A DNA stretch of 64,000 bases. It comes from Dendrobates tinctorius. Lineage: Eukaryota. Below, piece by piece: positions 6,276 through 24,722 of this stretch. The notes under the pieces are model-generated. The model worked only from the letters and a program-made list of their open reading frames with translations, was not told the DNA's origin and made no database searches. Every line of letters begins with the position of its first letter. The first letter of the stretch is position 1. The stretch covers positions 13,392,001 through 13,456,000 of the forward strand of contig NW_027361783.1 in the NCBI RefSeq assembly GCF_039654945.1, in the 5' to 3' direction. The translations under genes and the position numbers were made by a program.

Positions 6276-7816
6276 CCTGACCAGCGGCCGGTTCATGATA
6301 TGATCGGTATGTGCTGATTTATCACATTGTTTTTGAGCATGTGCGCGCATTGTGCAATATATCTTTTCATGTGATTATAACATTTAGGTCTACCGCATAC
6401 TGCGGCTTCCTCATGTGCTGCACGTTCTGACTTGTGTGGCGACGGTTTACAGCCACAGCTGACTTTACCACAGGCAACCTTGGCTCACATTGCAATTATA
6501 AGCACCTCATGTTGATGGTGACGATTGTCCGCGGTGGCTGTATGCTTCGCCACTATGTCAGCAGTTTAATTATACAATTCCGTTTAGGGGTTAAGTGCAA
6601 TAGAGTGTAGCCAGTGTCTTGATGATTTTTCTATATTTTCTTGCACATGATTTTTCAGCATTTTATTGCACATTTGATATATATTAATTTACCCTGTCAT
6701 CATTGTTACACTTGGCCTTTTTTTACTGTTCCTGTCGCTGGTCTATTTCTTTGTTCCAGGCTAATTTACCCTTTGACCATCTTTTATAATATTACATGTC
6801 CTGTATCTCACGTATGTGTCTTTTATGGACTAATTAAATATTCATTATATAGTTTTTTACTCTTGTTTTCTCCAGTTTTTCTATTAAGTTAGAGTCGTCG
6901 CTATGGGCACTTCATGAGGCACTATTTTGGGATATAACCATATGTGTTTGAAATGTATTTTTGGAGTTTTTTTTGCATACTGCCTTAAATAGATGTTGTG
7001 TGCACAGACTCAGTGTGTGACGTCAGTAAGGGGTGCCACCATGAATAGTGCCTAGGGCAGCATGAAGGCCAAATTTGGCCATCGTTCACGCTGCAGGCGC
7101 AGGCTGGGTGCTGAAGACAGCTCTCTTCATTGTCTCCTGCTTGTGCTGATATCAGCGTGACCATGAGACAATGATGGGAATTGTATTCAACAGCAGCTGT
7201 ATAATTCCTGTTTAAAATAAAGAATTAAATAAAAAAACAGTGTGGGCTCTCGCTCAATTTTTATAACGAGCAGAGAGAAAACCCACAGTTGGGGAATGAT
7301 GTTAATAATCTGGGAAAAGGGGCAATATCTCAAATGGTTCCCAGGATATTAATAACAGCTCACAGCTGTTTGATTAACATTTCCTGGTGAATTTACGTGG
7401 ATCCCAGAAAAAAAATGACTTCTATGAGTTCAAACCAGCTAAGGGTAAACAGACAGCTGTATGTTGATATTAATATTCTGTGAAGGGGCCAGAGATATTG
7501 ACACCCCTCCCAGGCTACCAACATCAGCCCTCAGCTACACCAGAAATTGCCATAACTGCAAATCAAAAGATCAACAGATCTGAGGAATTGATAGGATTCA
7601 TACTGGCATAAGGGGTAGTGACACCAAGCATATTGTTGCACAAAGAGAATGCCATTGGATCTCTGTTTGAAACACACAGGTTTAAGCAAACAGTTAAGTT
7701 TCACCTCCTTTCTATAATTCTTGTCCTGTGTTTTAATTTTAACTTCTAATTTGTGTGTTTTGTTGTGCTTTCCTTTATGTTTTTGTAGCTATTTACCTTT
7801 ATGATGATCAGTATAA

Positions 7817-7953
7817 GGCCGGGATCACACATGCAAGAAACACGGCCGCATAGCAATACATGCAGCAGAACGCTCCGCTCCCGAGTGTCGGCCGCAGTGC
7901 CGGGTATTAACATGCGAGACTCGGCCGTGTTTCTCACATGTGTGATCTCGGCC
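7817..7953. mobile_element. Short palindromic Harbinger/Tourist-like MITE
   Basis: ggccgggatcacacatg...catgtgtgatctcggcc inverted ends, flanked by taa and tta. Confidence 0.75.
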
Positions 7954-8520
7954 TTAGTGAGTCTGACTGAAAGTGCCTACATGGGAAGTAATTTGTCCTC
8001 CTTTTCTACCATCTTCTCTGGCTGGTAGGACACTGCACAGCACATGTAATAACATGTATATACGTGATCAGCCATTTATATCCATTTCATGCTCTCTTTT
8101 TATGTATATTTTGGGTCTGTATATATAGTTTTTAGTTTTATTTGTGTTTTTTACATGCAGTTAGCTCATCATCCGCAGGGTTTTTTTTTGTAATTTGTAT
8201 GGATTTTCTCTACCCTTGCTGTCTATTAAATCTATTATTGTATATATTGTCTTTTGCACAATTTTACCAGGTTGAGCACTAGCACTTTAGGATATTTGTG
8301 TATATTAAACACTATTTTCATCATTTTTACATTTTTAATTGTTGTTGTATTGCACCACAGTATATGGCATGCAATGTTGGCAAATGTATTTGTATGTCTA
8401 ATAATGAATTATCAGATTCACTTAATTTTGGTATGTACATCACTATGTAGCATTTACTATGTGGTGATCATTGTCACTATACACATTCTCTATGATAACG
8501 AAGTGTCTCTGAGATATATA

Positions 8521-9689
8521 TTCACACATGGTCAAAATTGTTGGTACCCCTCGTTTAATGACATAAAATCCCACAATGGTGACAGAAATAACTTGAATCT
8601 GACAAAAGTAATAATAAATCAAAAATCTATGAAAATGAACAAATGAAAGTCAAGACATGCTTTTCAACCATGCTTCCACAGAATTTAAAAAAAAATAAAA
8701 TTCATGAAATAGGCCTGGACAGAAATGATGATACCCTGAAAATAATGTGACAAAAAGGACAAGTTAATTAGCATCACAGGTGTCTACAATCTTGGAATCA
8801 GTGAGTGGGCCTGTATAGAGGGCTACATATAGCTAATATAGTGGGCTAGTTTTCAGCTTTGCCCAACACATGGTCGTCTAAAGGTTAGATGGAGACCTGG
8901 AGAGGAGTACAAGCCATAGTGTCTTGCACCCACTGTGAAATTTGGTGGAGGATTGGTGATGATCTGGGGATGCTTCAGCAAAGCTGGGATTGGGCAGGAT
9001 AATCTTTGTCAAGGACGTATGAATCAAGCCGCATACAAGGTTATCCTGGAAAAAACAGTTGATTCCTTCTGCTCAGGAAATGTTCCCCAAATCTGAGGAC
9101 TGGTTTTTCCAGCAGGACAATGCACCTTGCCACACAGCTGGGTGAATCAATGTGTGGATGAAGGACCACCACATCAAATCCCTGTCATGGACCGCCAAAT
9201 CTCCAGACCTGAACCCCATTGAAAATCTCTGGAATGTAATCAAGAGGAAGATGGATAGTCACAAGCCATCAAACAAAGACGAACTGCTTAACTTTTTGTA
9301 CCAGGAGTGGTATAAGGTCACCCAAAAGCAGTGTGAAAGACTGGTGGAAAGCATGCCAAGACGCATGAAAGCTGTGATTAAAAATCATGATTATTTCACA
9401 AAATATTGATTTCTGAATTCTTTCTGAGTTAAAACATTAGTATTGTTGTTTCTAAATGATTATGAACTTGTTTTCTTAGCATTGAGGTCTGTAAGCACTG
9501 CATTTTTTTTTGTTCTTTTGACCATTTCTCATTTTCTGAAAACAAATACAAAATTTAGTGCTTGGAAATTCAAAGACATGTTGTCAGGAGTTTATAGAAT
9601 AAAAGAGCAATTTACATTTTACTCAAAAATATACCTATAAAAAGAAAAAAACTGAAAATTTTGCAGTGGTCTCTTTTTGCCAGAGCTGA
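8521..9689 (+). mobile_element. Internally deleted Tc1/mariner remnant
   Basis: Frameshifted C-terminal transposase ([31 protein letters not shown]; ORF 9152-9409) with decayed ends next to TA runs. Confidence 0.8.
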
Positions 9690-10179
9690 ATATATTATGT
9701 TTCTGTACTAAACTTATAACTTTTTATACACATCACATATTGGACGTATTACTCCATTTTTTCTATTGTTTTGCTCAGTTTTGGAGCATCCCTCCTTCTT
9801 GTTCTGAACTGGGCCCTCCCACATGGGAACATAATCCCCTTACAGCTTTTTACTTATGGTTTCTGTTTTGGTCTTTATTCTCCTTTGTCCCTAATTAGTT
9901 TAACTTTTTGATATCTTAGTATTTCATTTGGGGCTTATTTTCTACTATATCCAATCAACCATTTCACCTCTCCCCCTTTTTTATGAATTAGTCATGGAAA
10001 ATTTGGCAGCAGTTGCTCTATTCTATCCAGTTCCCTTTTGGTTCAGATCATGCTTATTTCAGGTATTGATGTGGTCCCTATTTATTTAGACACTTCCTCT
10101 TCTAAGGCCTCCTTCACACTACCTGATGATTGCTGCACAGGAAAAACAAGGACTGCACTATCTATTCTATTATTTTTAA

Positions 10180-10960
10180 ACACTGTTTTTCGCTGATTAC
10201 TTTGTATCTCCGTTCATACTCCACCCACACACAAATGATGCACCATTTGAAAGGTAAACTTGCTCCCTTCAGCAAGAAAATAGCCAAACAAACCACACAT
10301 CCACGATTTGATCAAAAAATACAGTTTAAACATTAATTTTCATAAACATGCAGTAAGGAAAAATTACCTGCAGGTGGCACCACACTACCCCAAAGCTGCT
10401 TACAGTCATCACAAACAAATCCAAACCCAGCCTATTTCAGGCAAATTGAAGGATTGCACACTTCACTGTAGGTGAGTCACATATGCAAACACATTTGTAA
10501 GCATGCACTGCCTATTGAATTGCACACTTGCTCCGTTCATACTCCACCCACACAAACAAATGATACTCCATTTGAAAGATCAAATGCCATGCAAGTGGCA
10601 GCACACTACCCCAAAGCACAGTACCACAAAGCTGCTTATAGACATCACAAACCAATCCAAACATTTGCCTTGGGGTATTTCCAGCTTGCCCAGCCTATTT
10701 CAGGCACATTGGAGGATTGCACACTTCACTGCAGGCGAGTCACATATGCAAACACATGTGTAAACATGCACTGCTTTTTCGATGATTACTTCACCCCACA
10801 CACAAAAATGATACACCATTTGGAAGGTAAACTTGCCCCCTTCAGCAAGAAAAGAGCCAAACAAACCACACATTCAAGATTTTATCACTAAATACAGTTC
10901 AAACATTCATTTTCATAAACCTGCAGAAAGAAACAATGACCTGCAATTAGCACCTCAATT
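10180..10960. repeat. Degenerate tandem repeat of about 300 bp, 2-3 partial copies
   Basis: Blocks ctccgttcatactccacccacac, cccagcctatttcaggc, gagtcacatatgcaaacaca and cccttcagcaagaaaa each recur. Confidence 0.7.
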
Positions 10961-11288
10961 GGAAGACATTTTTTTGGCGTATACTTATCAAATCAATTTA
11001 TTGTATTACCAATCTACATATATAAATACCTGTCTGTGTTCATCATCTCATGAAATACATTTACATTTGACCAGCTTGCTTTTTCTGAAATTGCCTGTGC
11101 CCCTGACGATCAATGTGCAAATATTTTGCACGGGCCAATTAGTGTTTATGTAATAAACTTATACCTTTTTTTATACAATACATATTGGACGTATTGCTCC
11201 ATTTTTTCTATTGTTTTACTAAATAGGGACAAGACAGACACTCAGGACCTCATTTATTAAGACTGGTATTGTTTCAGCCATTCTTTAA

Positions 11289-13100
11289 AAGAGATGAGAG
11301 AACCTTTCAAGGTTTGGTTAGGTTCGATTCGCCAAAAGAGTTTGCAGAACAGTTTTCCGAACATACCCGAACCCCATTAGATTCAATGTGAAGCCAAACC
11401 AAACGTATACACAACACCTTAAGGGGTGACAAAAAGCTTCCCAAACAGCTAAAATTAGGGGCAGACACAATGAAAAGTGGCATTAATTGACCCACAGCAG
11501 AAATTTTCAAATGGCAAAGCAGCAAATAGCTATGGGCTATGCATGAGGTATGAGGGTCTGGGCCAGCATTTACAGCTTGGAATTGAAGTTTCACTGATGA
11601 CCTGGTGGTTAAGGGAATGGTGTAAGCCTTCTTAGCTGGGAGCCCTGATACCTTATGCAACAACTCCAATTTTTTTTTCAAACACACACAGATGACACAA
11701 TCATCAGTTTTGTACAGCAATATTGGTAGAAAAATGTAAGGCAAGTAACACAGGTAGTTGAGTGAAATTAAGTGCAGGCATGCCTGCCTGGGAGCCCTAA
11801 TTACACAGGAAACCCACCAGACCCAACTGGAAGTCTCCATATTTCAAAAAATTATTATCACACACCACTAACGTGACATCAATTTCCAGGCCTCAGACAC
11901 ACCTTCTACTACAGGCAACCCACCAGATGGAGATCTAAGTTGGAGTCACCATATTTAAAAAAATTATTGCTACACAACACTAAAGTGGCATCAATTTCCA
12001 CAGAGTATAAGCAGTATAATAGGCCTCTGACACACTTTCGACCACAGGCGACCCACCAGATGGAGACCCAACTTGGAGTTTCCACATTTCAAAAGATTGT
12101 TTGCAACATCATCAGCAGTAGCAATAGCAGGCACAGAAGACATCACAAAGATGGCACAGACTTCAATAACGTGAGATCAATGCATGACAATAAACATGAC
12201 ACCATCACCTAGTCTGCCCAGTCTGAGATCCATGACTTGTTCATTTTGATGAAAGTTAGGTGGCCTACACTTTCAGAGGATGGCTGGATGTGCTTATCCA
12301 TTAGGGCACCACCAGAAGCTAAAAAGACATGTTCTGAGAGAACACATGGCATGACAAAACCTCGAAGGCGTGACAGGTGAGCTCAAGCCACTCTTTAATT
12401 TTTAAAAACAAAATAGAAAAGACTCCAACAACCCCTCCTCTGGATGGCATTGATAGTGAGTGCACCCTTTTCCAGGGGGAAGCATCTTCTAAATTTACTC
12501 TTGTACCATGGATCTACCACCCTCCCACTGAACCCGTATCTGCAATGACAGTCCATAAATTTGAAATATTTTTATATTTTTATCCCTTCCTCATCCTCCT
12601 CTGTTTCCACCTCTTACTCTGGGACCGCCACCTTCTCACGCAGACTATTCAAAGTGGGTAGATGTCTGAATAGTGATGCTGATGATGGCATTGTCAACGC
12701 TAACCATCTTAGTAGCCATTTCAAAACTCTGCAGAAGAGAGCATTGGTCCTTCATCTGTGCCCATTCCGCAAGCATGATTTGCACCACATCTGGACTGCA
12801 TTTGCACCACCGTGTCAGAACATTGCAAATCGAACAGTTAACCGGTAGGCCGAAAGACCTCTGTAGCGATACAAGTCGATGAACTGCGGGGTGCGATCAG
12901 CAGAAGGGAGCTCATAGCTACCATGCTTTCTGCAGTAGCACGTCCAGGCTGGGGATAGTGGCTGAGAAATTGTTGAACCACCAGGTTGGGGACGTGGCAG
13001 CAGGATCAGTGGAGTCAGCCATTGCTCTAATTTGGCCTGGATAGCTGTCCACAACTCTTGAGCTGTGTGACTGCGATCCCCAAGGCACATTAATGTGAAC
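11289..13100 (-). mobile_element. Decayed hAT transposon: terminus and C-terminal transposase part (continues at 24723)
   Basis: Terminus-like agagatgagagaacc at ~11290. Minus strand gives a hATC-type motif (VLSEHVFLASGG...LTFIKMN, 12240-12345) and an NLVVQQFL motif (~12970). Three ~120-bp internal repeats at 11800-12100. Confidence 0.75.
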
Positions 13101-13353
13101 AGGGGAAGAGTCCTGAGGAGAGAATTTGCATATTGCCAGTGCCTTCTGGGATAAGTGAAGAGTCTCTGCGAGCGCAACGATCACTGGATTTTGGCTGTTG
13201 CAGCTGAAAAGAGGAAACCGGTAAACCAGGGAAAGAGTCCTGAGGAGAGAATTTGCATAATCCCAGTGCCTTCTGGGATAAGTGAAGAGTCTCCGCAAGC
13301 TCAACGATCACTGGATTTTCGCTGTTGCAGCTGAAAAGAAGAAATCAGTAAAC
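13101..13353 (+). promoter_or_regulatory. Two 127-bp CR1 5'-UTR monomers, each with an ATTTGCAT octamer
   Basis: gagtcctgaggagagaatttgcata at 13108 and 13235. Confidence 0.6.
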
Positions 13354-13390
13354 CGATTGGCTCATTTTTCATCGCTTTAACAATACCAAT

Positions 13391-14353
13391 ATGGAAGAGG
13401 CCAGGAGCCATTTGGTGAGCTGCATTTCTTGCTACATGTTTACAGACTTACCAGTGGAAAAGCCAAACTTCACATGCCACAAATGCAAGCTTGTGTCTCT
13501 GTTGGAGGAAAAGTTGCAAAATCTTGAAGAGAGGATAGCTACATTGAAGATCATTAAGGAAGATGAAGAGTTCTTAGACAGAGCAGAATAATCTCTTCAT
13601 GTTACAGAAAGAGAAGAAATTCGAAGTGCACCTGAAGAAACGGAGGAATGGAAACATGTGACCCAGAGAAGCAGGAGGATCGGGAAGCGGTCAGCGCCCA
13701 TACTGCTAAAGAACCAGTACTAGGCCCTCACGCAGGAGAACAATGAAGAAATACATCAGGATAACACTTTCCCCACAAGCACCAACCTTGTACGTCTTCA
13801 GAATCCTCCTGGATGGAGAAAGAAAAATTTTATGAAGAAGAAACAGAGAGTGGTGGTAATAGGGGATTCCCTGTTGAGAGGAACAGAGGCTGCTATCTGC
13901 AGACCGGATATAACCTCAAGAGAAATGTGCTGTCTTCCAGGTGCAAACATTAAAGATGTGTCTGACAGGATATCAGGACTCTTCAGACCTACTGATGACT
14001 ACCCATTCCTGCTAATACATGTGGGGACAAATGACACAGCAAGAAACGACCTGGAAACCATCTGCAATGACTTTGAAAACTTAGGTAAGAAAGTGAAAGA
14101 ACTGGGAGCGCAGGTGGTCTTCTCTTCCATCCTCCCAGTGGATTGCCATGGAACAAGGAGGTGGAATAAGATTCTGCAAGTGAACAACTGGCTGCGTCAA
14201 TGGTGCCGTCAGCAAGGATTTGGACTTCTGGATCACGGAGTGAATTACCTATACGATGGACTACTTGCTAGAGATGAGGTGCAGCTTACAAAGACTGGAA
14301 AATATGTATTTGGAAGTCGCCTTGCTACAATCATCAGGAGAGTTTTAAACTAG
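13391..14353 (+). pseudogene. CR1 ORF1 (zinc finger/coiled coil plus SGNH esterase), with stops
   Basis: CISC...CHKC followed by a leucine-zipper-like stretch; VIGDSLLRG and HVGTND esterase motifs. Confidence 0.9.
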
Positions 14354-14502: not shown

Positions 14503-17155
14503 CTAAAATGTTTATATACTAATGCACAAAGCATGGGCAAACAAACAAGGAGAATTGGAACTACCAACGCAGGAAAAGAAATATGATGTCATTGGAATCA
14601 CTGAAACTTGTTGGGCAATACACATGATTGGAATACAAGGATAGAAGGATACAACTTATTTGCTAGAAACAAACTTGATAAACGAGGAGGAGGTGTCGCA
14701 TTGTATGTTACAAACACGTATATCGGCACAGAGATTGAAGCTACAGAGACTGGGAGTCCTGTGGAAACTGTTTGGGTAAGAATACAAGGACAGAACTATG
14801 GAAAGCACACCATTGTAGGCATTTACTACAAGCCGCCTCTGCAAGCTGAAGATATGGATGAACTCTTTATGCATCAAATGGCCAAGTTCTCCAAAAAATA
14901 TGACATAGTTGTCATGGGGGATTTCAACTATCCTGACATTTGTTGGGAATCTCTCTCAGGCAAAACTAACAGGTCAAGGAAATTCTTATCCTCTCTTGCT
15001 GACAACTTTATCTTCCAAAAGGTAGGGGAGAAAACAAGGGGAACTGCTACATTGGATCTAATCCTTATAAACAGGGAGGAAATGGTTGAGGAGGTAAAAG
15101 TGGCTGGGACCCTAGGAGGAAGCGACCATGCTATTTTAAAATTTTGGATAACTAAAGGAGGAAGACCTGTGAAGATTCAGACGTCAAGGTTAGATTTCAG
15201 AAAGGCAGATTTTAAGGGATTCAGAAAGAGAATTGGAGGGATCCAATGGCTGGATATCCTAAAGGACAAAAATGTCCAGGAAGGATGGGAAATCTTGAAA
15301 AATGAAATTATCAAAGCACAAACGTTAACAATTCCGAAAAGAGGGAAGAATAGGAAGCGTTTAAGGAAACCAGGATGGATGAACACAGAACTTAAGCACA
15401 TGCTAAAAAGGAAGAAAGAAATGTTTATAAAATGGAAAAAGGGAGGCATATCTAACGAAGAATATAATGCTGTCTGCAGAAATTGCAGGGCACAAATCAG
15501 ATTACTAAAGCTGACAATGAATTGAAGCTTGCAAGAGATGTCAAAAGCAATAATAAAGGATTTTGGTGATATGTCAAAAGTAAAAGAAAAGTCAAAGATG
15601 CTAAAGGATTTTTACAGGATGAAAATGATGAAATGGTAAGACAGGATGTTGAGAAGTCCGAACTTTTAAATTCCTATTTTGCATCTGTTTTCTCCCAGAA
15701 AGGAAATGTAAATGGTTCTTCACTGTCCTATTAAGGGAATAGAAGAATCCAGGATATCTATAAACAGAAAGTTAGTGAGGAAACACTTAGCTAACCTAAA
15801 TGAATTCAAGTCTCCAGGTCCAGATGAATTACACCCCAGATTTCTGAAGGAGATAGCAGAAGAAATTTTTGAACCCCTCTCCATAATCTTTGAAAATTCT
15901 TGGAGAACATGAGACGTCCCAGAAGACTGGAGAAGAGCAAATGTTGTTCCTATCTTGAAAAAGGGGAAGAAGGTGGACCCAGGGAACTATAGCCCGGTGA
16001 GTTTGACTTCTATACCAGGAAAGATCTTTGAACAAATTATTAAACAACATGTATGTAAGTACCTGGACAAGAATGAAGTGATTAAACAGAGTCAGCATGG
16101 GTTTGTAACTAATAAGTCATGTCAGACTAACTTAATTTCCTTCTATGACAGAATCACTGATTGGGTGGATCAAGGAAATGCTGTAGATATAGTATATCTT
16201 GACTTCAGCAAAGCATCTGACAAAGTATCTCACACAATCCTTATTGAAAAAATGACTAGGTATGGAATGGACAAGGCAACTGTTAGGTGGATTCAAAACT
16301 GGCTTAGTGATCGGACCCAAAGAGTGGTCGTAAATGGCTGCACATCCAGTTGGAAGAATCTCTCAAGTGGGGTACCACAGGGCTCTGTCCTGGGCCCTGT
16401 ATTGTTCAACATCTTTATCAACAATTTAGATGAAGGAATTGAGGGTAAACTGATTAAATTTTCTGATGACGCAAAGCTAGGAGGGATAGCTAATACTAGA
16501 GAAGAGAGAGAGAGGTTTTAAAAAGATATAAATAAACTGAAGCAGTGGGCAGCAACTAACAGAATGGTTTTTAACAGGGAAAAATGCAAAGTACTACATC
16601 TGGGCAATAAAAATGAAAAAAACATGTACAAAATGGGAGGAATAGGGCTAAGCAACAGCACATGTGAAAAAGACTTGGGTATACTAATTGATCACAGACT
16701 GAATATGAGTCAACAGTGTGATGCAGCAGCAAAAAAGGCAAATGCAATTCTTGGATGTATAAAAAGAAGCATACAGTCTAGATCACGTGAAGTCATAATT
16801 GCGCTCTACTCCTCTTTGGTCAGATCTCATCTGGAATACTGTGTCCAGTTTTGGGTGCCACATTTTAAAAAAGACATCAACAAACTGGAGCAAGTTCAGA
16901 AAAGAGCGACCAGAATGGTGACCAGTCTGCAAACCCAGTCTTATGAGGAAAGGTTGCAGCATTTGGGAATGTTTAGCTTGCAGAAGAGAAGATTGAGAGG
17001 AGACTTAATAGCTGTCTACAAGTATCTCAAGGGCTGTTACTTTGTAGAAGGATCATCTTTATTCTCATTTGCACAAGGAAAGACTAAAAACAATAGGATG
17101 ACACTGAATGGGAGGAGACACAGATTAGATATTAGAAAAAACTTTTTGACAGTTA
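14503..17155 (+). pseudogene. CR1 ORF2 (APE endonuclease plus reverse transcriptase), disrupted; last codons at 24541-24645
   Basis: [44 protein letters not shown] and FSDD motifs. Confidence 0.93.
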
Positions 17156-17769
17156 AGGGCCTTTTACACATAGCGACGCACCAGCGATAACGATAGCGAT
17201 CCGACAAGGCATAGATCGCTGGTGTGTCGTTACGTGATCGCTAGATAGCTTTCAAACAGTCCAATCTCGTCAACGACTCTAGAGAGATCAGCGATCTGCA
17301 TAGCGACCTCATTGCTCGTTGAGTACCTTTCACATTACTAAACAAAAACCGATTCAGACCTCAGTGGGCGTGCTTCAGCGTTTCATTTACAACACCCCTC
17401 AAGCACCGATTGGTGGTCACCGCTGCGCTGTCATTGGCCGGCGGCGTCATTAAAGAGGACGTAGTAGCGTTTCAGTTTAAATCTCTGGAGCGCTGTGGTT
17501 AGCTTCTAAACCAGCATTTTTCTCCCTAGAGACAAAAGTGCATTTTTGGTTTGATTTTGCTATTCGTCCTTCAGCAACCCTCTTGAAGACTCATCAGCGT
17601 TATTTTCGAATACCTCCATTTTTGAGACCATCTGAAGAATCAACAGTGCTAGTTACGTTATTTTTTTTTTCTCCTCCATAACTTTCGGATTTTTCACATT
17701 GTCAGAGGTCGGTTTATTTTGGTTCAAAAGTTATAATTTTTTTGTATGCAATTTTATTTGTTTTATTTT

Positions 17770-18560
17770 AGTTTAGTTTAGAAACCGCGCCCGCCCCCAT
17801 TTTTGTAATTGTGGAACGTGATACTTTTATAGGTCAGTGACCAAGCTTATGCGATTCAAACTCTTTTTTATCTAATGTATGTCCATTGTGTCCATATGCA
17901 CATGTCTGGTCAGCCATTTTAGTTTAGAAATTGCGCCCGCCCCCATTATTGTAATTGATGAACGTGATACTTTTATAGGTCAGCGACCAAGCTTATGCGA
18001 TTCAAACTCTTTTTTATCTTGTGTATGTCCATTGTCTCCATATGCACATGTCTGGGCAGCCATTTTAGTTTTGAAACCGCGCCCGCCCCCATTATTGTAA
18101 TTGTTGAACGTGATACTTTTATAGGTCAGCGACCAAGCTTATGCGATTCAAACTCTTTTTTATCTTGTGTATGTCCATTGTCTCCATATGCGCATGTCTG
18201 GGCAGCCATTTTAGTTTTGAAACCGCGCCCGCCCCCATTATTGTAATTGTTGAACGTGATACTTTTATAGGTCAGCGACCAAGCTTATGCGATTCAAACT
18301 CTTTTTTATCTTGTGTATGTCCATTGTCTCCATATGCACATGTCTGGGCAGCCATTTTAATTTTGAAACCGCGCCCGCCCCCATTATTGTAATTGTTGAA
18401 CGTGATACTTTTATAGGTCAGCGACCAAGCTTATGCGATTCAAACTCTTTTTTATCTTGTGTATGTCCATTGTGTCCATATGCACATGTCTGGGCAGCCA
18501 TTTTAGTTTAGAAACCAAGCCCGCCACCATTATTGTTATTGTTGAACGTGATACTTTTGA
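17770..18560 (+). repeat. 146-bp tandem repeat, about 5.4 copies, inside the Harbinger
   Basis: GC box (ccgcgcccgcccccat or variant) at 17785, 17931, 18077, 18223, 18369 and 18515. Confidence 0.95.
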
Positions 18561-18629
18561 ACCGTGCCGTAACTGAGCCACCATGCCAAAATGAAACGTT
18601 GTCACCATTTCCTTTTATTTTTTTTAAAG

Positions 18630-19891
18630 ATGGCAGCAAGTAGCCAAGTAGCAAGTAGCCAAGACATCATACGCCAATTTATTGACATGTATCGGTCAAT
18701 GCCCTGCCTCTGGAAGGTGAAGTCGCCAGACTACAGTAATAAGTACAAAAAGAAGGTTGCATATGAGAAACTTGTGCATCTATATCAAGAACATCATCCC
18801 AGCGAAACGGTAGATGAGGCTGTTATTAAAAAAAAAATACAAGCACTACGCACTGTCTACAAGAAGGAATTGAACAAGGTGGAAAAGTCTACTAGGTCGG
18901 GGGCGGGTACCGATGAAGTGTATGTTCCGAGGTTGTGGTACTACAACTTACTGGAGTTTACTCGAGACCAGGAAATCCCCTGGCTTATGCATTGTTCAAT
19001 GTCACTGCCTGAAGAGGAAGAAACAGTGACACGGCCTGATTCCCCTCTTGTCAATGTAAGTATGTTTTGGGTTTCCCTCAAAAAACCAATGATACATATT
19101 TATGTACATGCTATTGTTGAGTTTTAATGAGTGAGTCCATGATTTAAAACTTTGTTCACAGCTGATAACTGTACATCAGTAATTGGGTTATCATTACATA
19201 ATTTCTACAAATGGTCGATGTCAGTACATAGCCAGTACCACTTCTCCCCCCCTCATAATAATTTCTGTTATGTGTTTAGAAAAAACTCTTTTTAATTTTT
19301 CTGTGTTCTAACCTGGTTTTTCTGTTCTTGCAGCATGTTACAGAAGATGTCTCACCTACACCATGTGTCATACAGGAAACCCCAGCAACATCAAACGCAA
19401 CCGACGACAGGATGTCCATAATTGCAGAGGAGGCAAGTGTGTCCACGTGAGCGTACACTGTGCAAAGGCGTCTCCCAGTGAGTCGAAAAAGAAAGGCCAC
19501 CGCTCCTCCTTTTCCAGAGTTTGTCGATTTAGCAAAGAACATATTGGTGCTGCAGGAAAAACAAGCAATTGGTGGCTTTGCACACATGGTGGACGAAAGA
19601 CTTCGGTCTCTCGACGTAACGCAAAGGCTTCAGGTCGAGAGAATAATATTTGAAACGCTAAATAAAGCTGCCTTCGGAAAACTTACAGACAGTTATACTC
19701 TTGTTGATGGCTAGTCTATGTCACAAAACCCATGGCCGCAGACGCAAGAACATGTAACCAGCACGCCAAGAAGGATGATTCAGCCAATACAGAGCATGAA
19801 CTTTGGAACCCCACATTTCCAGTCTGCCCCATTCATAAATCCTGGAAGGCAGCAACTTAATGACTCTGACTGTTTTTACACTCAATTATAG
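18630..19891 (+). pseudogene. Harbinger MADF (Myb/SANT-like) DNA-binding protein; coding exons 18630-19055 and 19334-19891, two nonsense codons in exon 2
   Basis: FIDMYRSMPCLWKVKSPDYSNK...KKKIQALRTVYKKE...YVPRLWYY is MADF-like. A phase-0 gtaagt...ttgcag intron keeps the frame. The C-terminus resembles a BESS motif. aataaa at ~19998. Confidence 0.85.
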
Positions 19892-20440
19892 TTTTAATGT
19901 TTACTTGACTGTTTTTACACTCAATTATAGTTTTAATGTTTACTTGTTGTATTAAAAAAATTAGTTTTGTATCCTTATTGTTTGTTTCAAAAAAAGAAAT
20001 AAAATTTAAATTTTTGCATTACACATGATCACGGTTACAAGTTCTTTGTAGACTGTGACAAACTGGTTTGCCGCGCAATAAAGGCAGGTTTCATAGTCTG
20101 CTGTGTAGTTAAGTAAAGCCAGCAATTATCCTGGTACGTGTAGTGTTCCTTATGAAAAAGTGTGTTATCTTATAACATTAATATTCTATCTGTTACGATG
20201 CCAAAAAAAGGTGCCACATGAGAGGTAGAATTGTTTTTTCAAAATAACATTTTTTTAATGTTTTAATTACTGACAGTGTCAGTTTCTTAATTTTTTTTTT
20301 TTTTTTGGCTTTTAAATTCCTTTTTTATGATAGATTTTTAAACAAACCTTTTTAGTTTTACATATGTCAACATGACATAGATATATTTTTTTAACAAAAA
20401 ATAAGAAAAGGTAGAACATAAAATATAACGCGAAACTAAA

Positions 20441-21985
20441 TTAAATGTTTTCACCCTGCGGTTGGGCTGCCACAAAACGGTCCAGCATCACTCCGAGTTG
20501 GTGTAACGCAGACATCGCCCTCCTGTGTGCTGCCAAGAGATCAGGTAAGGTTGGTATTTCTGTTGAGGAAATTTACATTGTTTAGGGCGTTTTTTAAATG
20601 TGGGTGCATATGGGGCCATAGTATGTGGGGCAGCATATGGTGCCATAATGTAGGTGTGGTAGCAAATGGGGCCATATCCTATGGGTCGCAATATGGGGCC
20701 ATAGTGTAAAGTGGCAGCAGATGGGTGCATACGGTTCATTCTTGCAGTCAAACACTTACGTTTTTGTGCCGCCTCTGACTCATCTGATGAGGAGATAACA
20801 GCCCTTCCACGTCGAGTGGCAACACGTACTAGAAAAAAAAAGGTATATATATATATATTTGTTACACAAATTATCATTTCAAACATGCTTCAAACAAAAA
20901 TAAAAAAGTTAGTCGATTACCGGAGGTCGAGTCTGCTCCAGCTTCTCGGAGTGATGCTGGAGAAAACATACCCATTGGGGATGAAGTGGAGGAAGCAATT
21001 TGTGGTTGAGGGGTTGAGGGGTGCGAGGGGGTCCTTACGGGCTCTGGTATCTAAAAATTGGAAATTGTGCATTGAGCATTTCCAAAGTGGTAAAAACATC
21101 CAAAAATAAAACGGTATTGTAATACTATATTATAGAAACCGAATACTTCTTTCAAAAGTTGTTATTATCTCTCTCTCCAACAACCATCTTTTTTGTATCT
21201 AACTTATATTTTTTTTTTAAAAAAATATTTTTACCATCAGGTCTGGTTACAATTTTTTTGCTTTCGTTTCCTCCCTGGATTACACTTTGGTTTTTTTAAA
21301 TTATTACAATTCAAAATCTCTTTTCCTTTCCCCTTATGTGAACCTTGACTTCCTCCTCCCCCCCCTTTTCTTTTATCTTTCAACCCAATAAAAATACTAA
21401 TAACATGAATAAACGTATTTTAAAAACTTACGGACTCAGCTTCAGGAGATGCTTGCAGCGCCGGGCTTGCGTGTGCTGCGGGGGCTGGTGGTGCTGCAGG
21501 TGGTGATGGGGCTGGGGCCGCTGCATGCGCCGCTGTTGGGAAAAAATTAATACTGAGCGCAATACCACTTCAACTTGAGTTGTGCAATTTAACATGTGCG
21601 AATGTATTTTTATTTTCTTTTTTTTAAACTGTAAACCCTGTCGTAAATAAAAAAAACAAAACACTTCAACAACTAATATAACATATGTAAAAAACATACT
21701 ATCTGGAACACTCACCTCGCTCCCTTCGCACTTGTTGTTGGAGGCTGGTGAGGAGGTCTCTTGAGCGAAAGCGCAGATCCGCCAATTTTTTCCTTATTTG
21801 TGTCGTGGTGCGCTCAACTCCGAAACGGCGTAACAGTCCTCCCCTGATCCTCCGCAACACAGCCCGCTTGTGTCTCATGGGGTGTGCATGCGCCTGTCCA
21901 CACGCATAATCGCGCCTCTCCATCTCCTGTACCAGGAAACGCATTTCGGCCTCCCCCAAGGTGTAGCTCTCTGTCTACCAGCCAT
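20441..21985 (-). CDS. Second Myb/SANT-like gene of the Harbinger; 5 exons (to 21716; 21532-21432; 21050-20921; 20828-20760; 20559-20441), 215 aa from ATG 21944
   Basis: All four introns are GT-AG with pyrimidine tracts, and splicing gives a stop-free frame ending in TAA at 20441. Exon 1 FLVQEM...RTTTQIRKKLADLR is trihelix/SANT-like. The upstream ATG at 21985 is 1 nt out of frame. Confidence 0.75.
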
Positions 21986-22328
21986 TGCTTCCTGTTTTGC
22001 TTTCACTACGCAGCAGGGACGCCCACAAGAACGTCGTGACGTCACAACGTTTTCGCGCCTCTTTTGGTGACGCTACTGCGTTATTTAAATTATGGTACTA
22101 GTGCGCGCTTATCGGAGACGCAATAGCGTCCACTTGAGGGCGGTTATAAAATGGCGTCTTAACGCCGATGCTACAGTGCTGATACTGTGTCGCAGGGCCA
22201 TGTTCCCTTTTCTTTTTTTTTTTCTTTTAAAAACCAGAAACACTTTGTAAAGTAGTAACTATTTGAATTTATTGTTGTCTTTATCACACAAGAATAAAAT
22301 AAACATGTTAAATATACACTTTTGCTGT

Positions 22329-23582
22329 CTAGATTTGATGCTGCCAAGTAACAGCACCAGGCCCATTAAAATATTGGCAGTATTGCTCCCTGCAGGCCTT
22401 TGCATCATCACGGTTTCTTCCCCTTGCCAGTGCTTGAAGTCCAGGTACTGCGGGATCATTGTCGCGCCACCCACCAAGAAGAACCTGACCATTTGTCGTG
22501 TCAACAGAGTCCACAAAGGCAGGCGGAGTGTAATCATTTGCAATGCAGCGCCGCAGAAAATTGTGCAGCACGCAACAAGCCATAACGACCGAGTCAATGG
22601 ATTCCAACTTTAGGTTTATGGGTGTGTGGAAAATCCGAAAGCGGCTGGCCATGATGCCAAACGCATTCTCCACAACCCTTCGTGCCCTTGACAAACGGTA
22701 GTTAAATATCCGTGTTTGCACCGTCACTCTTTTTTGGGGGTACGGTTTCAGCAGATTGGCATGCAGCGGGAAGGCTTCATCACCGACAAAAACAAAGTTG
22801 AGGTTGGCGGTTGTCTCTGTGTTGGGAGGCAGGTTCAGGTCACATTTGTTCAATCGCTCTCCAAAAAGTGTATGATCTAACACTCCCCCATCTGAAACCC
22901 TGCCGTTCATGCCTACATCAACATTTATGAACTCGTAGTTTGCATTAACAAGGGCCATAAGGATAACACTAAAATAGCCCTTATAATTGAAAAAATAGGA
23001 TCCACTTTTCGGCGGTTGGGTGAACCTCACATGTTTACCATCCAAAGCCCCCCCACAGTTTGGGAACTGCCAAAGCCTCTGAAAATCAGAAGCAATATTT
23101 TTCCACTCCACCTCTGTTTTTGGAAACTGGATGTAGCTCCTGAGGCTTTGAACTATGGCATTGCATGTTTCAGAAATCAAACTGCTGAGCAGTGACAAAG
23201 AAACGGCAGAAGAAAATTGCAGATCTTTGAGTGATCATCCGGTGGCCAGTAATCTCAGCGTCACGGTCAATCGTTCGTCTACCGGCACAGCAGCTCGCAT
23301 TTTGGTATTTCTCCTTTCAATCAATGGCATCACCCTGGCTAGTAAAAATTTGAAAGAGTCCTCTGACATCCGCAGATAGTTCTTGAAATCATGAGGATTG
23401 TTCTCCTGCAGTTCTCTTACGAGCTGCATGTGTGAGAATTCGCACCTCTTCGCCAGCCACTCTCTGGTCCACATGCGCTGCTTTCTTTTGGACCGCCTCT
23501 CTTACATCAGTGCCTCTTCATGTAGCCGACCACCCTCCAACACCAAAGCAGCAGCCACAATAGCACGCTCTGCGCCGTTCAT
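22329..23582 (-). pseudogene. PIF/Harbinger (HARBI1-like) DDE transposase with two in-frame stops and no frameshift
   Basis: FKNYLRMS, LTVTLRLLATG, FPNCGGALDGKH, FFNYKGYFS, GRVSDGG, VGDEAFPL, FNYRLSRARRVVENAFG. ORFs 23502-, 23235- and 22329- share one frame. Confidence 0.95.
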
Positions 23583-23649
23583 GATATACAAACTGCAAAA
23601 TAAAATAAAATCATTAGACGATTTGGAAACAAGAGCTTCAATTGTATAA

Positions 23650-23950
23650 AGCCAACAAATAGCAACAATGGGGTGGGAGCGGTCTGACACCTGAAATGTA
23701 TGCCCCAGGCCAGTGCGTATGGACACTATGAGCATACAATAGGAAAAAGTGAAAAACTGATGCATGGTCGCTGAGCTCTAAAAGTGTCACGCTGAAAAGT
23801 GGCAAGAAAAGGGGGGTGGGCGCGGTCTGAAACTAAAATGGCTGTGCAGGCCCAGTGCGTATTGACAGAATGGACATACAAAAGCTAAAAAAATTTAAAT
23901 TGCTGAAACATGGTTAATAATAAGCAATAAAAGTATTACGCTACAAAACA
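23650..23950 (-). repeat. About two diverged copies of the 146-bp repeat in inverted orientation
   Basis: ggggtgggcgcggtctgaaactaaaatggctg, tggacataca, tggtcgctga and aaagtgtcacg match the reverse complement of the 17770-18560 unit. Confidence 0.8.
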
Positions 23951-24722
23951 GCTTGTATGGTACTATTTAAATACATACCTGGCAAACAGAGTTGTTCTTT
24001 GATGAATAAAATGAATCCACAAATAAAAGCGCAATAGCGATTGCAATAGGGACGCCGAAGCAACCGCGGTGTGAAAGCCGTTTAAATATAAACGCTGTAG
24101 CGACTCACACTGGAACGTTGAAGCCAAAATGGTTAATAACATCCACTATGCACGGGAACAAAGTGTTGAATGAGGCGCTCCAGCATTGTCTTTTATACCT
24201 TTGTCAGATACATTTCGCACATTGTGAGCGCTGTAAAGACCAATAGGGCAGTGGAGGCGTGGCCGGTAAGTCACGCCTGTGTCGCTGAGCCATGCGTCGC
24301 TATCGACGTCGCTCGTCGTTTTTAAGCTTCAAACACAACGATAATTACTGGCCAGCGGGACGCCAGCGATGGAAAAATGTACCTGCACATTCGAGCACGA
24401 TCAGCGATAGCCGACGGGGGGTCTGGTCGCCACTACATTTCACACTTAGCGAGATCGCTAGCGATATCGCTGTCGCGTCACAATATCGGTGACGCTTGAG
24501 CGATATCGCTAGCGATCTCGCTTAGTGTGAAACCCCCTATAGAGTGATCAATGAGTGGTACAGGCTGCCATGAGAGGTGGTGAGTTTTCCTTCTATAGAA
24601 GTCTTCAAACAGAGGCTGGACAGACATCTGTCTGGGATGATTTAGTGAATCCTGCTTTGAGCAGGGGGTTGGACCAGATGGCCCAGGAGGTCCCATCCAA
24701 CTCTACGACTCTATGATTCTAT

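What the first reader, a model, noticed from the sequence alone, without database searches (positions are those of the whole stretch)
20441..21985. Hidden 5-exon second Myb/SANT-like gene makes this a three-gene Harbinger
Seen: four GT-AG introns (phases 1, 0, 1, 1) join five exons into a stop-free frame with a SANT/trihelix-like N-terminus, a Pro/Ala/Ser linker and a helical tail (LPDLLAAHRRAMSALHQLGVMLDRF). A CpG-rich region with a TGACGTCA palindrome (22037-22044) lies between it and the transposase polyA signal (22268-22273). Known: canonical Harbingers encode a transposase plus one Myb-like protein, and extra ORFs are reported in only some families. Inference: this family encodes two different Myb-type proteins, and the second could be a regulator, inhibitor or anti-silencing factor. 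It has no nonsense codon while the other two genes have two each, although its likely first ATG is 1 nt out of frame.
Basis: partly seen in the sequence, partly recalled or inferred. Interest (0 to 1): 0.8.

Follow-up and report, generated by a model that had tools for sequence, protein, structure and literature searches.

The report
Frog Harbinger transposon with third gene
This frog jumping gene carries a third gene for a small DNA-binding protein beside its cutting enzyme and its usual helper; the gene is spliced, kept by selection and shared with related elements in other frogs, but its job is untested.

Summary
On the minus strand, five exons joined by four GT-AG introns (phases 1,0,1,1) give 221 codons with no stop. 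The natural ATG (21985) is out of frame because one base is missing from a G-run.

The gene lies inside one 7,383-bp PIF/Harbinger element (17156-24538). The element's exact ends are shown by a LINE reading frame that closes again once the element is removed.

Contigs from public runs join exons exactly at three of the four predicted introns. The fourth could not be tested.

Homologues occur only in frogs, all uncharacterised. In poison-frog genomes at least five further loci show the same order: transposase, this gene, then a reversed MADF gene. Two Xenopus elements hold the same three genes in another order.

Intron 1 sits at the same position from Xenopus to poison frogs. dN/dS is about 0.06-0.3, like the transposase and MADF genes.

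The N-terminus folds as a trihelix domain. A disordered linker and one long C-terminal helix follow.

So the three-gene reading is supported, but the function is inferred. This copy is dead in all three genes. The scan reported the same family on other pieces of this genome. I found no published three-gene Harbinger.

The parts
17156..24538 (.). Whole PIF/Harbinger element, 7,383 bp, holding three genes
   Evidence: The terminal regions 17156-17309 and 24315-24533 resemble the ends of related elements in L004, L001 and L002. The flanking CR1-like LINE ORF reads through (..KNFLTVRVINEWYRLP..) once the element and one TSD copy are removed.
17153..17155 (.). Left target-site duplication, TTA
   Evidence: Read from the sequence. 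The right copy reads ATA, one mismatch.
24539..24541 (.). Right target-site duplication, ATA
17156..17176 (+). Left terminal inverted repeat, AGGGCCTTTTACACATAGCGA
   Evidence: It resembles the TIR AGGCCCCATCTCACATAGCGA of the complete element in L004.
24518..24538 (-). Right terminal inverted repeat, AGGGGGTTTCACACTAAGCGA
17626..18655 (+). Left subterminal array of 146-bp tandem repeats; it probably lies in a 5'UTR intron of the MADF gene
   Evidence: the repeat finder family D1. Contigs carry sequence like 17673-17702 directly before 18626 (table 7). The intron reading is an inference.
18630..19891 (+). MADF gene: coding exons 18630-19052 and 19334-19891, with two in-frame stops in this copy
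   Evidence: Pfam MADF_DNA_bdg E=1.5e-16. Alignment to the L001 MADF protein. Contig joint 19052/19334.
20441..20559 (-). Third gene, exon 5: C-terminal helix (Q)IPTLPDLLAAHRRAMSALHQLGVMLDRF, then TAA
   Evidence: joint 20559/20760 in all four runs. The homologous tail is, and it is predicted as one long helix.
20760..20828 (-). Third gene, exon 4: Ser/acidic stretch
   Evidence: The intron upstream of it (intron 3) lies in a simple repeat that the read tool skipped, so it was not tested.
20921..21050 (-). Third gene, exon 3: Pro/Ser-rich linker
   Evidence: Joint 21050/21432 in runs X5 and X6.
21432..21532 (-). Third gene, exon 2: Ala/Pro-rich linker
   Evidence: Joint 21532/21716 in run X6.
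21716..21985 (-). Third gene, exon 1: start codon and trihelix (Myb/SANT-like) domain
   Evidence: Weak Pfam Myb_DNA-bind_5 hit, E=0.0027. Model pLDDT 93.8. Best structural matches are the Zeste and GT-1 DNA-binding domains. Homologues start MAARRRATPWG.
21953..21957 (-). G-run holding the one-base deletion that puts the ATG out of frame
   Evidence: Exon 1 is 270 nt here against 271 nt in six homologues. A homopolymer error in the assembly cannot be excluded.
21986..22180 (-). CpG-rich promoter region of the third gene, with TGACGTCA (22037-22044) and two copies of the motif AACGCAGTAGCGTC (22069-22082, 22117-22130)
   Evidence: The motif is conserved in the R. imitator copies; the TGACGTCA palindrome is not.
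22268..22273 (-). Transposase poly(A) signal, AATAAA
22332..23582 (-). Transposase gene: no introns, 417 codons, two in-frame stops in this copy
   Evidence: Pfam DDE_Tnp_4 E=5e-32. 74% identical over 417 aa to the intact L001 transposase.
23691..23892 (-). Right subterminal copies of the 146-bp repeat, inverted relative to the left array
24091..24104 (+). Motif AACGCTGTAGCGAC in the presumed transposase promoter; a weaker copy lies at 17458-17471 upstream of the MADF gene
   Evidence: In L004 the motif has 4 hits against 0.06 expected, one or two in each of the three promoter regions.

Best explanation
The segment is a real third gene of a frog lineage of PIF/Harbinger DNA transposons. The gene has its own CpG-rich promoter and four spliced introns. 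It encodes a protein of about 190-250 aa made of three parts: an N-terminal trihelix (Myb/SANT-like) DNA-binding domain, a disordered Pro/Ala/Ser linker, and one long C-terminal helix. It is a different family from the element's MADF protein. Shown here: the gene model, its place inside the TIRs, its recurrence in diverged elements, the conserved intron position, purifying selection and the fold. Inferred: the protein is needed for the element to spread. It would bind element DNA through the trihelix domain, either at the subterminal 146-bp repeats or at the motif AACGCAGTAGCGTC shared by the three promoters. [quoted passage not shown] On this view it either shares the recruiting and nuclear-import work that a single Myb-like protein does in two-gene Harbingers, or it tunes expression of the element's genes. 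The copy in this window is dead: the third gene has a frameshift, and the transposase and MADF genes each have two stops.
For: Gene model and frame.
Exact GT-AG joints at introns 1, 2 and 4 in contigs of public runs.
Element limits from the re-closing LINE ORF and the TIRs.
Same order (transposase, third gene, reversed MADF) in L001, L003, L004 and L008, with partial support from L002 and L009.
L004 is a complete element with TIRs, a GGA/GGA TSD and about 400-bp subterminal inverted repeats around all three genes.
Xenopus laevis L006 and L010 hold the same three genes. In L006 they lie inside a perfect 26-bp inverted repeat.
Intron 1 falls after residue 90 in phase 1 in poison frogs and in Xenopus.
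dN/dS is 0.20-0.30 over the full length and 0.06-0.09 in the domain among R. imitator copies. Between subfamilies, synonymous sites are saturated while pN is 0.24-0.40. The transposase (0.14-0.20) and MADF (0.10-0.17) values are similar.
Fold: pLDDT 93.8, and the best of 48,161 chains are the Zeste DNA-binding domain (Z 7.5) and GT-1 (Z 6.5).
Domain, disordered linker and C-terminal helix.
Not a copy of the MADF gene (hhalign probability 1.5%).
Shared promoter motif.
Against: No experiment or binding data exist, so the function is inference.
Pfam hits to Myb_DNA-bind_4/5 fall below the curated thresholds in nearly all members. The structural Z-scores lie in a range the tool warns can reflect a common helical arrangement.
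The runs are not on record as RNA, so the joined forms could come from cDNA or from processed copies. Intron 3 was not testable.
The dN/dS values rest on a few annotated, intact copies, which biases them towards low values.
The promoter motif is absent from the L001 subfamily, and its count in the window alone is not significant.
The gene order differs between Xenopus and poison frogs, so the gene may have moved or been gained more than once.
Confidence: 0.75

Rival explanations
1. The roles are reversed. The five-exon trihelix protein is the working Myb-like partner that recruits and imports the transposase, as in zebrafish Harbinger3_DR and NAIF1. The MADF protein is then the added or regulatory gene.
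For: The build of N-terminal trihelix domain, linker and C-terminal helix is what is described for Harbinger Myb-like proteins (PMC9392472). Its constraint is as strong as that on MADF. A relative in Hyla lies near a DDE_Tnp_4 gene with no MADF detected.
Against: MADF is the described partner in insect and nematode PIF elements (PMC9710019, PMC13668399), and it too is under purifying selection here. The Hyla locus has no clear TIRs and a decayed transposase, so it is inconclusive. No binding or interaction data separate the two proteins.
Confidence: 0.3
2. It is a passenger: a host gene or a gene from another element that an ancestral Harbinger captured, carried along without serving the element.
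For: The gene has introns while the transposase has none. Its position differs between Xenopus and poison-frog elements. Complex loci hold extra copies of the domain (L002, L011).
Against: It is retained in elements whose transposases are only 55-79% identical. Synonymous sites are saturated while dN stays low. Many full-length copies exist in R. imitator. No host gene outside frog elements appeared among 1.84 billion representative proteins.
Confidence: 0.08
3. The segment is a separate nested insertion, or a chance open frame, in this one copy.
For: Only one copy lies in the window. The Pfam support is weak.
Against: The same arrangement recurs at other loci in several species. No separate TIR or TSD surrounds the segment. 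The splice joints are exact. Full-length homologues exist.
Confidence: 0.02

Closest known systems
Canonical two-gene PIF/Harbinger elements (for example zebrafish Harbinger3_DR, insect PIF, Caenorhabditis Turmoil)
   Same: DDE_Tnp_4 transposase, short TIRs, 3-bp TSD, subterminal repeats and a separate Myb/SANT/MADF helper gene (PMC9710019, PMC13668399).
   Different: This element has a third gene, conserved and selected, that encodes a second and unrelated trihelix protein. The papers I could search describe two genes only.
Harbinger Myb-like proteins and their domesticated descendants NAIF1 and MSANTD1-4
   Same: A small protein with an N-terminal trihelix DNA-binding domain and a non-globular remainder, encoded beside a Harbinger transposase. 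It gives weak Pfam hits to Myb_DNA-bind_4/5, the families that (from my memory) hold these proteins.
   Different: Sequence searches recover only frog proteins and none named NAIF1 or MSANTD. Here the protein sits alongside a MADF helper rather than replacing it.
Zeste and plant GT-1 trihelix DNA-binding domains
   Same: They are the best structural matches to the exon-1 domain: Z 7.5 with rmsd 2.5 over 67 residues, and Z 6.5 with rmsd 2.6 over 63 residues.
   Different: Only 15-16% identity and no significant sequence match to any solved structure. They are host transcription factors, not transposon genes.
MADF domain proteins
   Same: Also a Myb/SANT-like helical DNA-binding fold, and encoded in the same element.
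   Different: The third gene gives no Pfam MADF hit. The profile-profile comparison with the element's own MADF domain gives probability 1.5%.

Membership tests
PIF/Harbinger superfamily (the element) | DDE_Tnp_4-type transposase | tested here: met
   PF13359 E=5.1e-32. 74% identical to an intact 418-aa frog Harbinger transposase.
PIF/Harbinger superfamily (the element) | Terminal inverted repeats with a 3-bp target-site duplication | tested here: met
   Window: TIRs begin AGGG.., TSD TTA/ATA with one mismatch, and the LINE ORF closes again across the site. L004: a perfect GGA/GGA TSD.
PIF/Harbinger superfamily (the element) | A separate gene for a Myb/SANT/MADF helper protein | tested here: met
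   MADF gene, E=1.5e-16.
PIF/Harbinger superfamily (the element) | Two genes only, as described in the literature | tested here: not met
   Three genes lie inside one TIR pair in the window, in L004 and in X. laevis L006.
Myb/SANT-like trihelix domain (Pfam Myb_DNA-bind_4 / Myb_DNA-bind_5) | Score above Pfam's gathering threshold | tested here: not met
   Window exon 1 scores 18.0 bits against 21.7, and 14.6 against 27. Of ten homologues, nine give only sub-threshold hits (or, for P0014, none); only P0015 passes, at 22.1 against 21.7.
Myb/SANT-like trihelix domain (Pfam Myb_DNA-bind_4 / Myb_DNA-bind_5) | Trihelix fold | tested here: inconclusive
   The confident model (pLDDT 93.8) has Zeste and GT-1 as its top two matches among 48,161 chains. 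The Z-scores of 7.5 and 6.5 lie in the range the tool calls possibly generic.
MADF domain family | Sequence or profile similarity to MADF | tested here: not met
   No MADF Pfam hit. hhalign probability 1.5%.
NAIF1 / MSANTD (domesticated Harbinger Myb-like genes) | Detectable homology, and a single-copy host gene in conserved synteny | tested here: not met
   None of the named hits is called NAIF1 or MSANTD. The gene is multi-copy and lies inside TIRs. No direct alignment to NAIF1 was made, because no tool supplied that sequence.

The most novel reading that the evidence does not exclude
An old frog lineage of Harbinger transposons works with three proteins instead of two. The third, a trihelix protein unrelated to MADF, would be either required for transposition or the element's own regulator, acting through the 14-bp motif shared by the promoters of all three genes.
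Probability: 0.4. Interest if true: 0.75.

Novelty: new variant of a known kind. Interest (0 to 1): 0.62.

Why it matters
PIF/Harbinger elements are the textbook case of a DNA transposon that splits cutting and DNA binding between two genes. Both genes have repeatedly been domesticated together (HARBI1/NAIF1, ALP1/ALP2, HDP1/HDP2). A conserved, selected third gene would mean the machinery can be more complex than described. It would also be a further source of trihelix host genes, and a test case for how a transposon divides recruitment, nuclear import and self-regulation among its proteins. Apparently intact natural copies are annotated in Ranitomeya and Anomaloglossus, so the question can be tested directly with the cell-based Harbinger assay.

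Tried and rejected
- A profile search of the domain against PDB sequences found nothing meaningful.
- Foldseek E-values were all non-significant. Only the exhaustive VIA search ranked the trihelix domains on top.
- I thought the MADF protein's tail looked like a BESS motif. Pfam gives no hit, so I dropped the claim.
- The TGACGTCA palindrome is real but is not conserved in the R. imitator or A. baeobatrachus promoters, so I give it no weight.
- The Hyla sarda locus (L007) has a decayed transposase, no MADF and no clear TIRs. It cannot settle whether two-gene elements with this protein exist.
- L011 looked like another clean three-gene example but holds three copies of the domain and is probably a nest of elements. 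I did not count it.
- Trees of the three genes resolve only Xenopus against poison frogs and the R. imitator cluster. They show no conflict but give no fine co-phylogeny.
- P0008 and P0012 are not on record for context.
- Paper searches for a three-gene Harbinger found none. One search was rejected for its syntax. Sinzelle et al. 2008 is not held under the id I tried.
- The idea that this copy's third gene was specially preserved is rejected: it has a frameshift, and finding no stop is within expectation.

Full report
**Observation.**
The exons are 21959-21716, 21532-21432, 21050-20921, 20828-20760 and 20559-20441. Every intron starts GT and ends AG, with phases 1, 0, 1, 1. The joined frame is 221 codons with only the final TAA.

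The ATG at 21985 is one base out of frame with the domain. TGACGTCA lies at 22037-22044. The 190 bp upstream of the ATG have CpG o/e 1.58. The transposase AATAAA lies at 22273-22268.

In a script I checked the joined frame only for its length and its stops. I built no family consensus.

**The element.**
The flanking genes are a MADF gene on the plus strand (Pfam E=1.5e-16) and a DDE_Tnp_4 transposase on the minus strand (E=5e-32).
- The transposase is one frame of 417 codons without introns (23582-22332), with two in-frame stops.
- The MADF gene has coding exons 18630-19052 and 19334-19891, also with two stops.
- A 146-bp tandem array (17626-18655) is mirrored by inverted copies at 23691-23892.

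Beyond these repeats, 17156-17309 and 24315-24533 resemble the ends of related frog elements. The termini read AGGGCCTTTTACACATAGCGA and, on the other strand, AGGGGGTTTCACACTAAGCGA.

The element sits inside a CR1-like LINE. When 17156-24541 is removed, the LINE frame reads straight through..RKNFLTVRVINEWYRLP... This fixes the element at 17156-24538 (7,383 bp), with a 3-bp duplication of TTA/ATA. All three genes therefore lie inside one TIR pair, and nothing marks the middle gene as a separate insertion.

**Splicing.**
I laid contigs from four public runs of the same organism on 18500-23600. Joints fall exactly at 20559/20760 (all four runs), 21050/21432 (X5, X6) and 21532/21716 (X6). Each skipped stretch ends CT..AC on the plus strand, which is GT..AG for this gene.

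Intron 3 lies in a TA-rich repeat that the tool skips, so it is untested. The runs are not on record as RNA. The joined forms therefore come either from cDNA or from processed copies, and either way the predicted introns were removed by splicing. The MADF intron also shows a joint (19052/19334).

**Relatives.**
The exon-1 peptide finds only 21 proteins among 1.84 billion representatives. The best hits (57-61% identity) are uncharacterised proteins of poison frogs: Anomaloglossus baeobatrachus, Ranitomeya imitator, R. variabilis, Phyllobates terribilis and Dendrobates tinctorius. Weaker hits (33-37%) are multi-copy Xenopus laevis proteins and one Hyla sarda protein.

Full-length members start MAARRRATPWG[DE]AE and end IPTL.DL....H..ML.RF.AAQQ. 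These match the window's out-of-frame start MAGRQRATPW and its exon 5.

In six homologous genes exon 1 is 271 nt. Here, ATG to donor is 270 nt. So this copy has lost one base, in the G-run 21953-21957. A homopolymer error in the assembly is possible. From its closest relatives I infer that the window comes from a poison frog.

**Gene order elsewhere.**
- Poison frogs: the order is transposase, third gene, then reversed MADF in L001 and L003 (A. baeobatrachus, two chromosomes) and in L004 and L008 (R. imitator). L002 has the transposase and third gene but a rearranged continuation. L009 has the first two genes before the contig ends.
- L004 is a complete element (7459-14070). It has TIRs, a perfect GGA/GGA duplication and about 400 bp of subterminal inverted repeats around all three genes.
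- X. laevis: L006 and L010 hold transposase, reversed MADF, then the third gene. In L006 this lies inside a perfect 26-bp inverted repeat.

The three-gene content is thus shared by frogs that split long ago, while the order differs. Divergence from the window falls in step for the transposase (79% to 55%) and the third gene (59% to 35%). Trees of the three genes agree on the few supported splits.

**Conservation and selection.**
Intron 1 falls after residue 90 in phase 1 in poison frogs and in Xenopus. The last intron, in phase 1 just before IPTL, is shared among poison frogs. The middle introns vary with the linker.

| Comparison | dN/dS or site differences |
|---|---|
| Third gene, three R. 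imitator copies, full length | 0.20-0.30 |
| Third gene, R. imitator copies, trihelix domain | 0.06-0.09 |
| Third gene, between subfamilies | pS 0.62-0.92 (saturated), pN 0.24-0.40 |
| Transposase | 0.14-0.20 |
| MADF | 0.10-0.17 |

The third gene is therefore as constrained as the two accepted genes. Two caveats apply: few copies were compared, and they were chosen because they are annotated as intact.

**The protein.**
Pfam gives only sub-threshold hits to Myb_DNA-bind_4/5 for the window and for nearly all relatives.

A model of the exon-1 domain is confident (pLDDT 93.8, four helices). Among 48,161 solved chains its two best matches are the Zeste DNA-binding domain (Z 7.5, rmsd 2.5 over 67 residues) and the Arabidopsis GT-1 trihelix domain (Z 6.5). 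The scores are moderate, but they agree with the Pfam hints.

A full-length relative folds as the domain, a disordered stretch (residues 90-144) and one long helix (150-188). A profile comparison with the element's own MADF domain gives probability 1.5%. The two helper proteins are therefore distinct families, not recent duplicates.

**A shared promoter motif.**
In the young element L004, the motif AACGCAGTAGCGTC occurs four times against 0.06 expected. It occurs once upstream of the transposase, once upstream of MADF and twice upstream of the third gene.

In the window it lies at 22069 and 22117 (third gene), at 24091 (transposase side) and, weakly, at 17458 (MADF side). It is absent from the L001 subfamily. 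This suggests common control of the three genes, but it is a lead only.

**Interpretation.**
- Shown: an expressed, or at least spliced, intron-bearing gene for a trihelix protein is an integral and selected part of a frog Harbinger lineage.
- Inferred: the protein serves the element, binds element DNA, and uses its C-terminal helix for protein contacts.
- Open: whether it or MADF plays the classical recruiting and import role.
- This copy: dead in all three genes. The lack of nonsense codons in the third gene is within expectation (about 1.2 expected).

**Literature and earlier notes.**
Papers I could read describe PIF/Harbinger elements as two-gene (PMC9710019, PMC9392472, PMC13668399). Searches for a three-gene form found nothing. 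Repbase is not covered by these searches.

The scan has already reported the same family on other pieces of this genome, and two follow-up agents reached the same reading. I treat those as agreement, not as independent evidence.

Noticed in passing
window 20599-20708 (inside intron 4): Two units of about 55 nt (TGTGG..ATATGGGGCCATAGT..) coincide with a depth spike and with many contigs that break at 20606 and 20647. This looks like a separate, very abundant short repeat lodged in the intron.
   Followed up: no
P0001 and P0004 (Phyllobates terribilis): These annotated proteins join the first ~26 residues of the transposase (MNNVQCAVVSAALLVEEAQ.QDEARM) directly to the start of the third protein. 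They probably come from deletion derivatives that lost the transposase body. P0004 also carries a frog zinc-finger-type N-terminus, probably through a mis-joined gene model.
   Followed up: no
window 21793/23266: One contig in run X6 joins these two places and skips 1,472 bases, that is, most of the transposase and the start of the third gene. This points to internally deleted copies in the genome.
   Followed up: no
L011:5971-17231 (R. imitator): Three copies of the third gene's domain lie between one transposase and one MADF gene, at 51%, 32% and 37% identity and on both strands. This is either a nest of elements or a set of paralogues.
   Followed up: partly
L002:14776-18923 (A. baeobatrachus): A second third-gene copy lies on the minus strand, head to head with a MADF gene and next to the first element. 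This arrangement differs from the usual one.
   Followed up: no
window 24438-24532 and 17167-17236: Just inside each terminus the TIR sequence recurs as an inverted copy and forms a hairpin (44-nt arms, 91% complementary, at the right end). L004 shows the same at both of its ends.
   Followed up: no
L001 / L004 comparison: Synonymous divergence is much lower in the transposase (dS about 0.6) than in the MADF gene (1.5-2.0) or the third gene (about 1.4) for the same pair of elements. Possible causes are recombination between subfamilies or constraint on synonymous sites.
   Followed up: no
window 21048/21464: In run X5, two abundant contigs replace the exon 2/exon 3 junction region with about 22 other letters. 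Expressed relatives therefore differ in the linker exons.
   Followed up: no
window 14608-17155 and 24542 onward: The host of the element is a CR1-like LINE whose ORF2 C-terminus is split by the insertion.
   Followed up: partly
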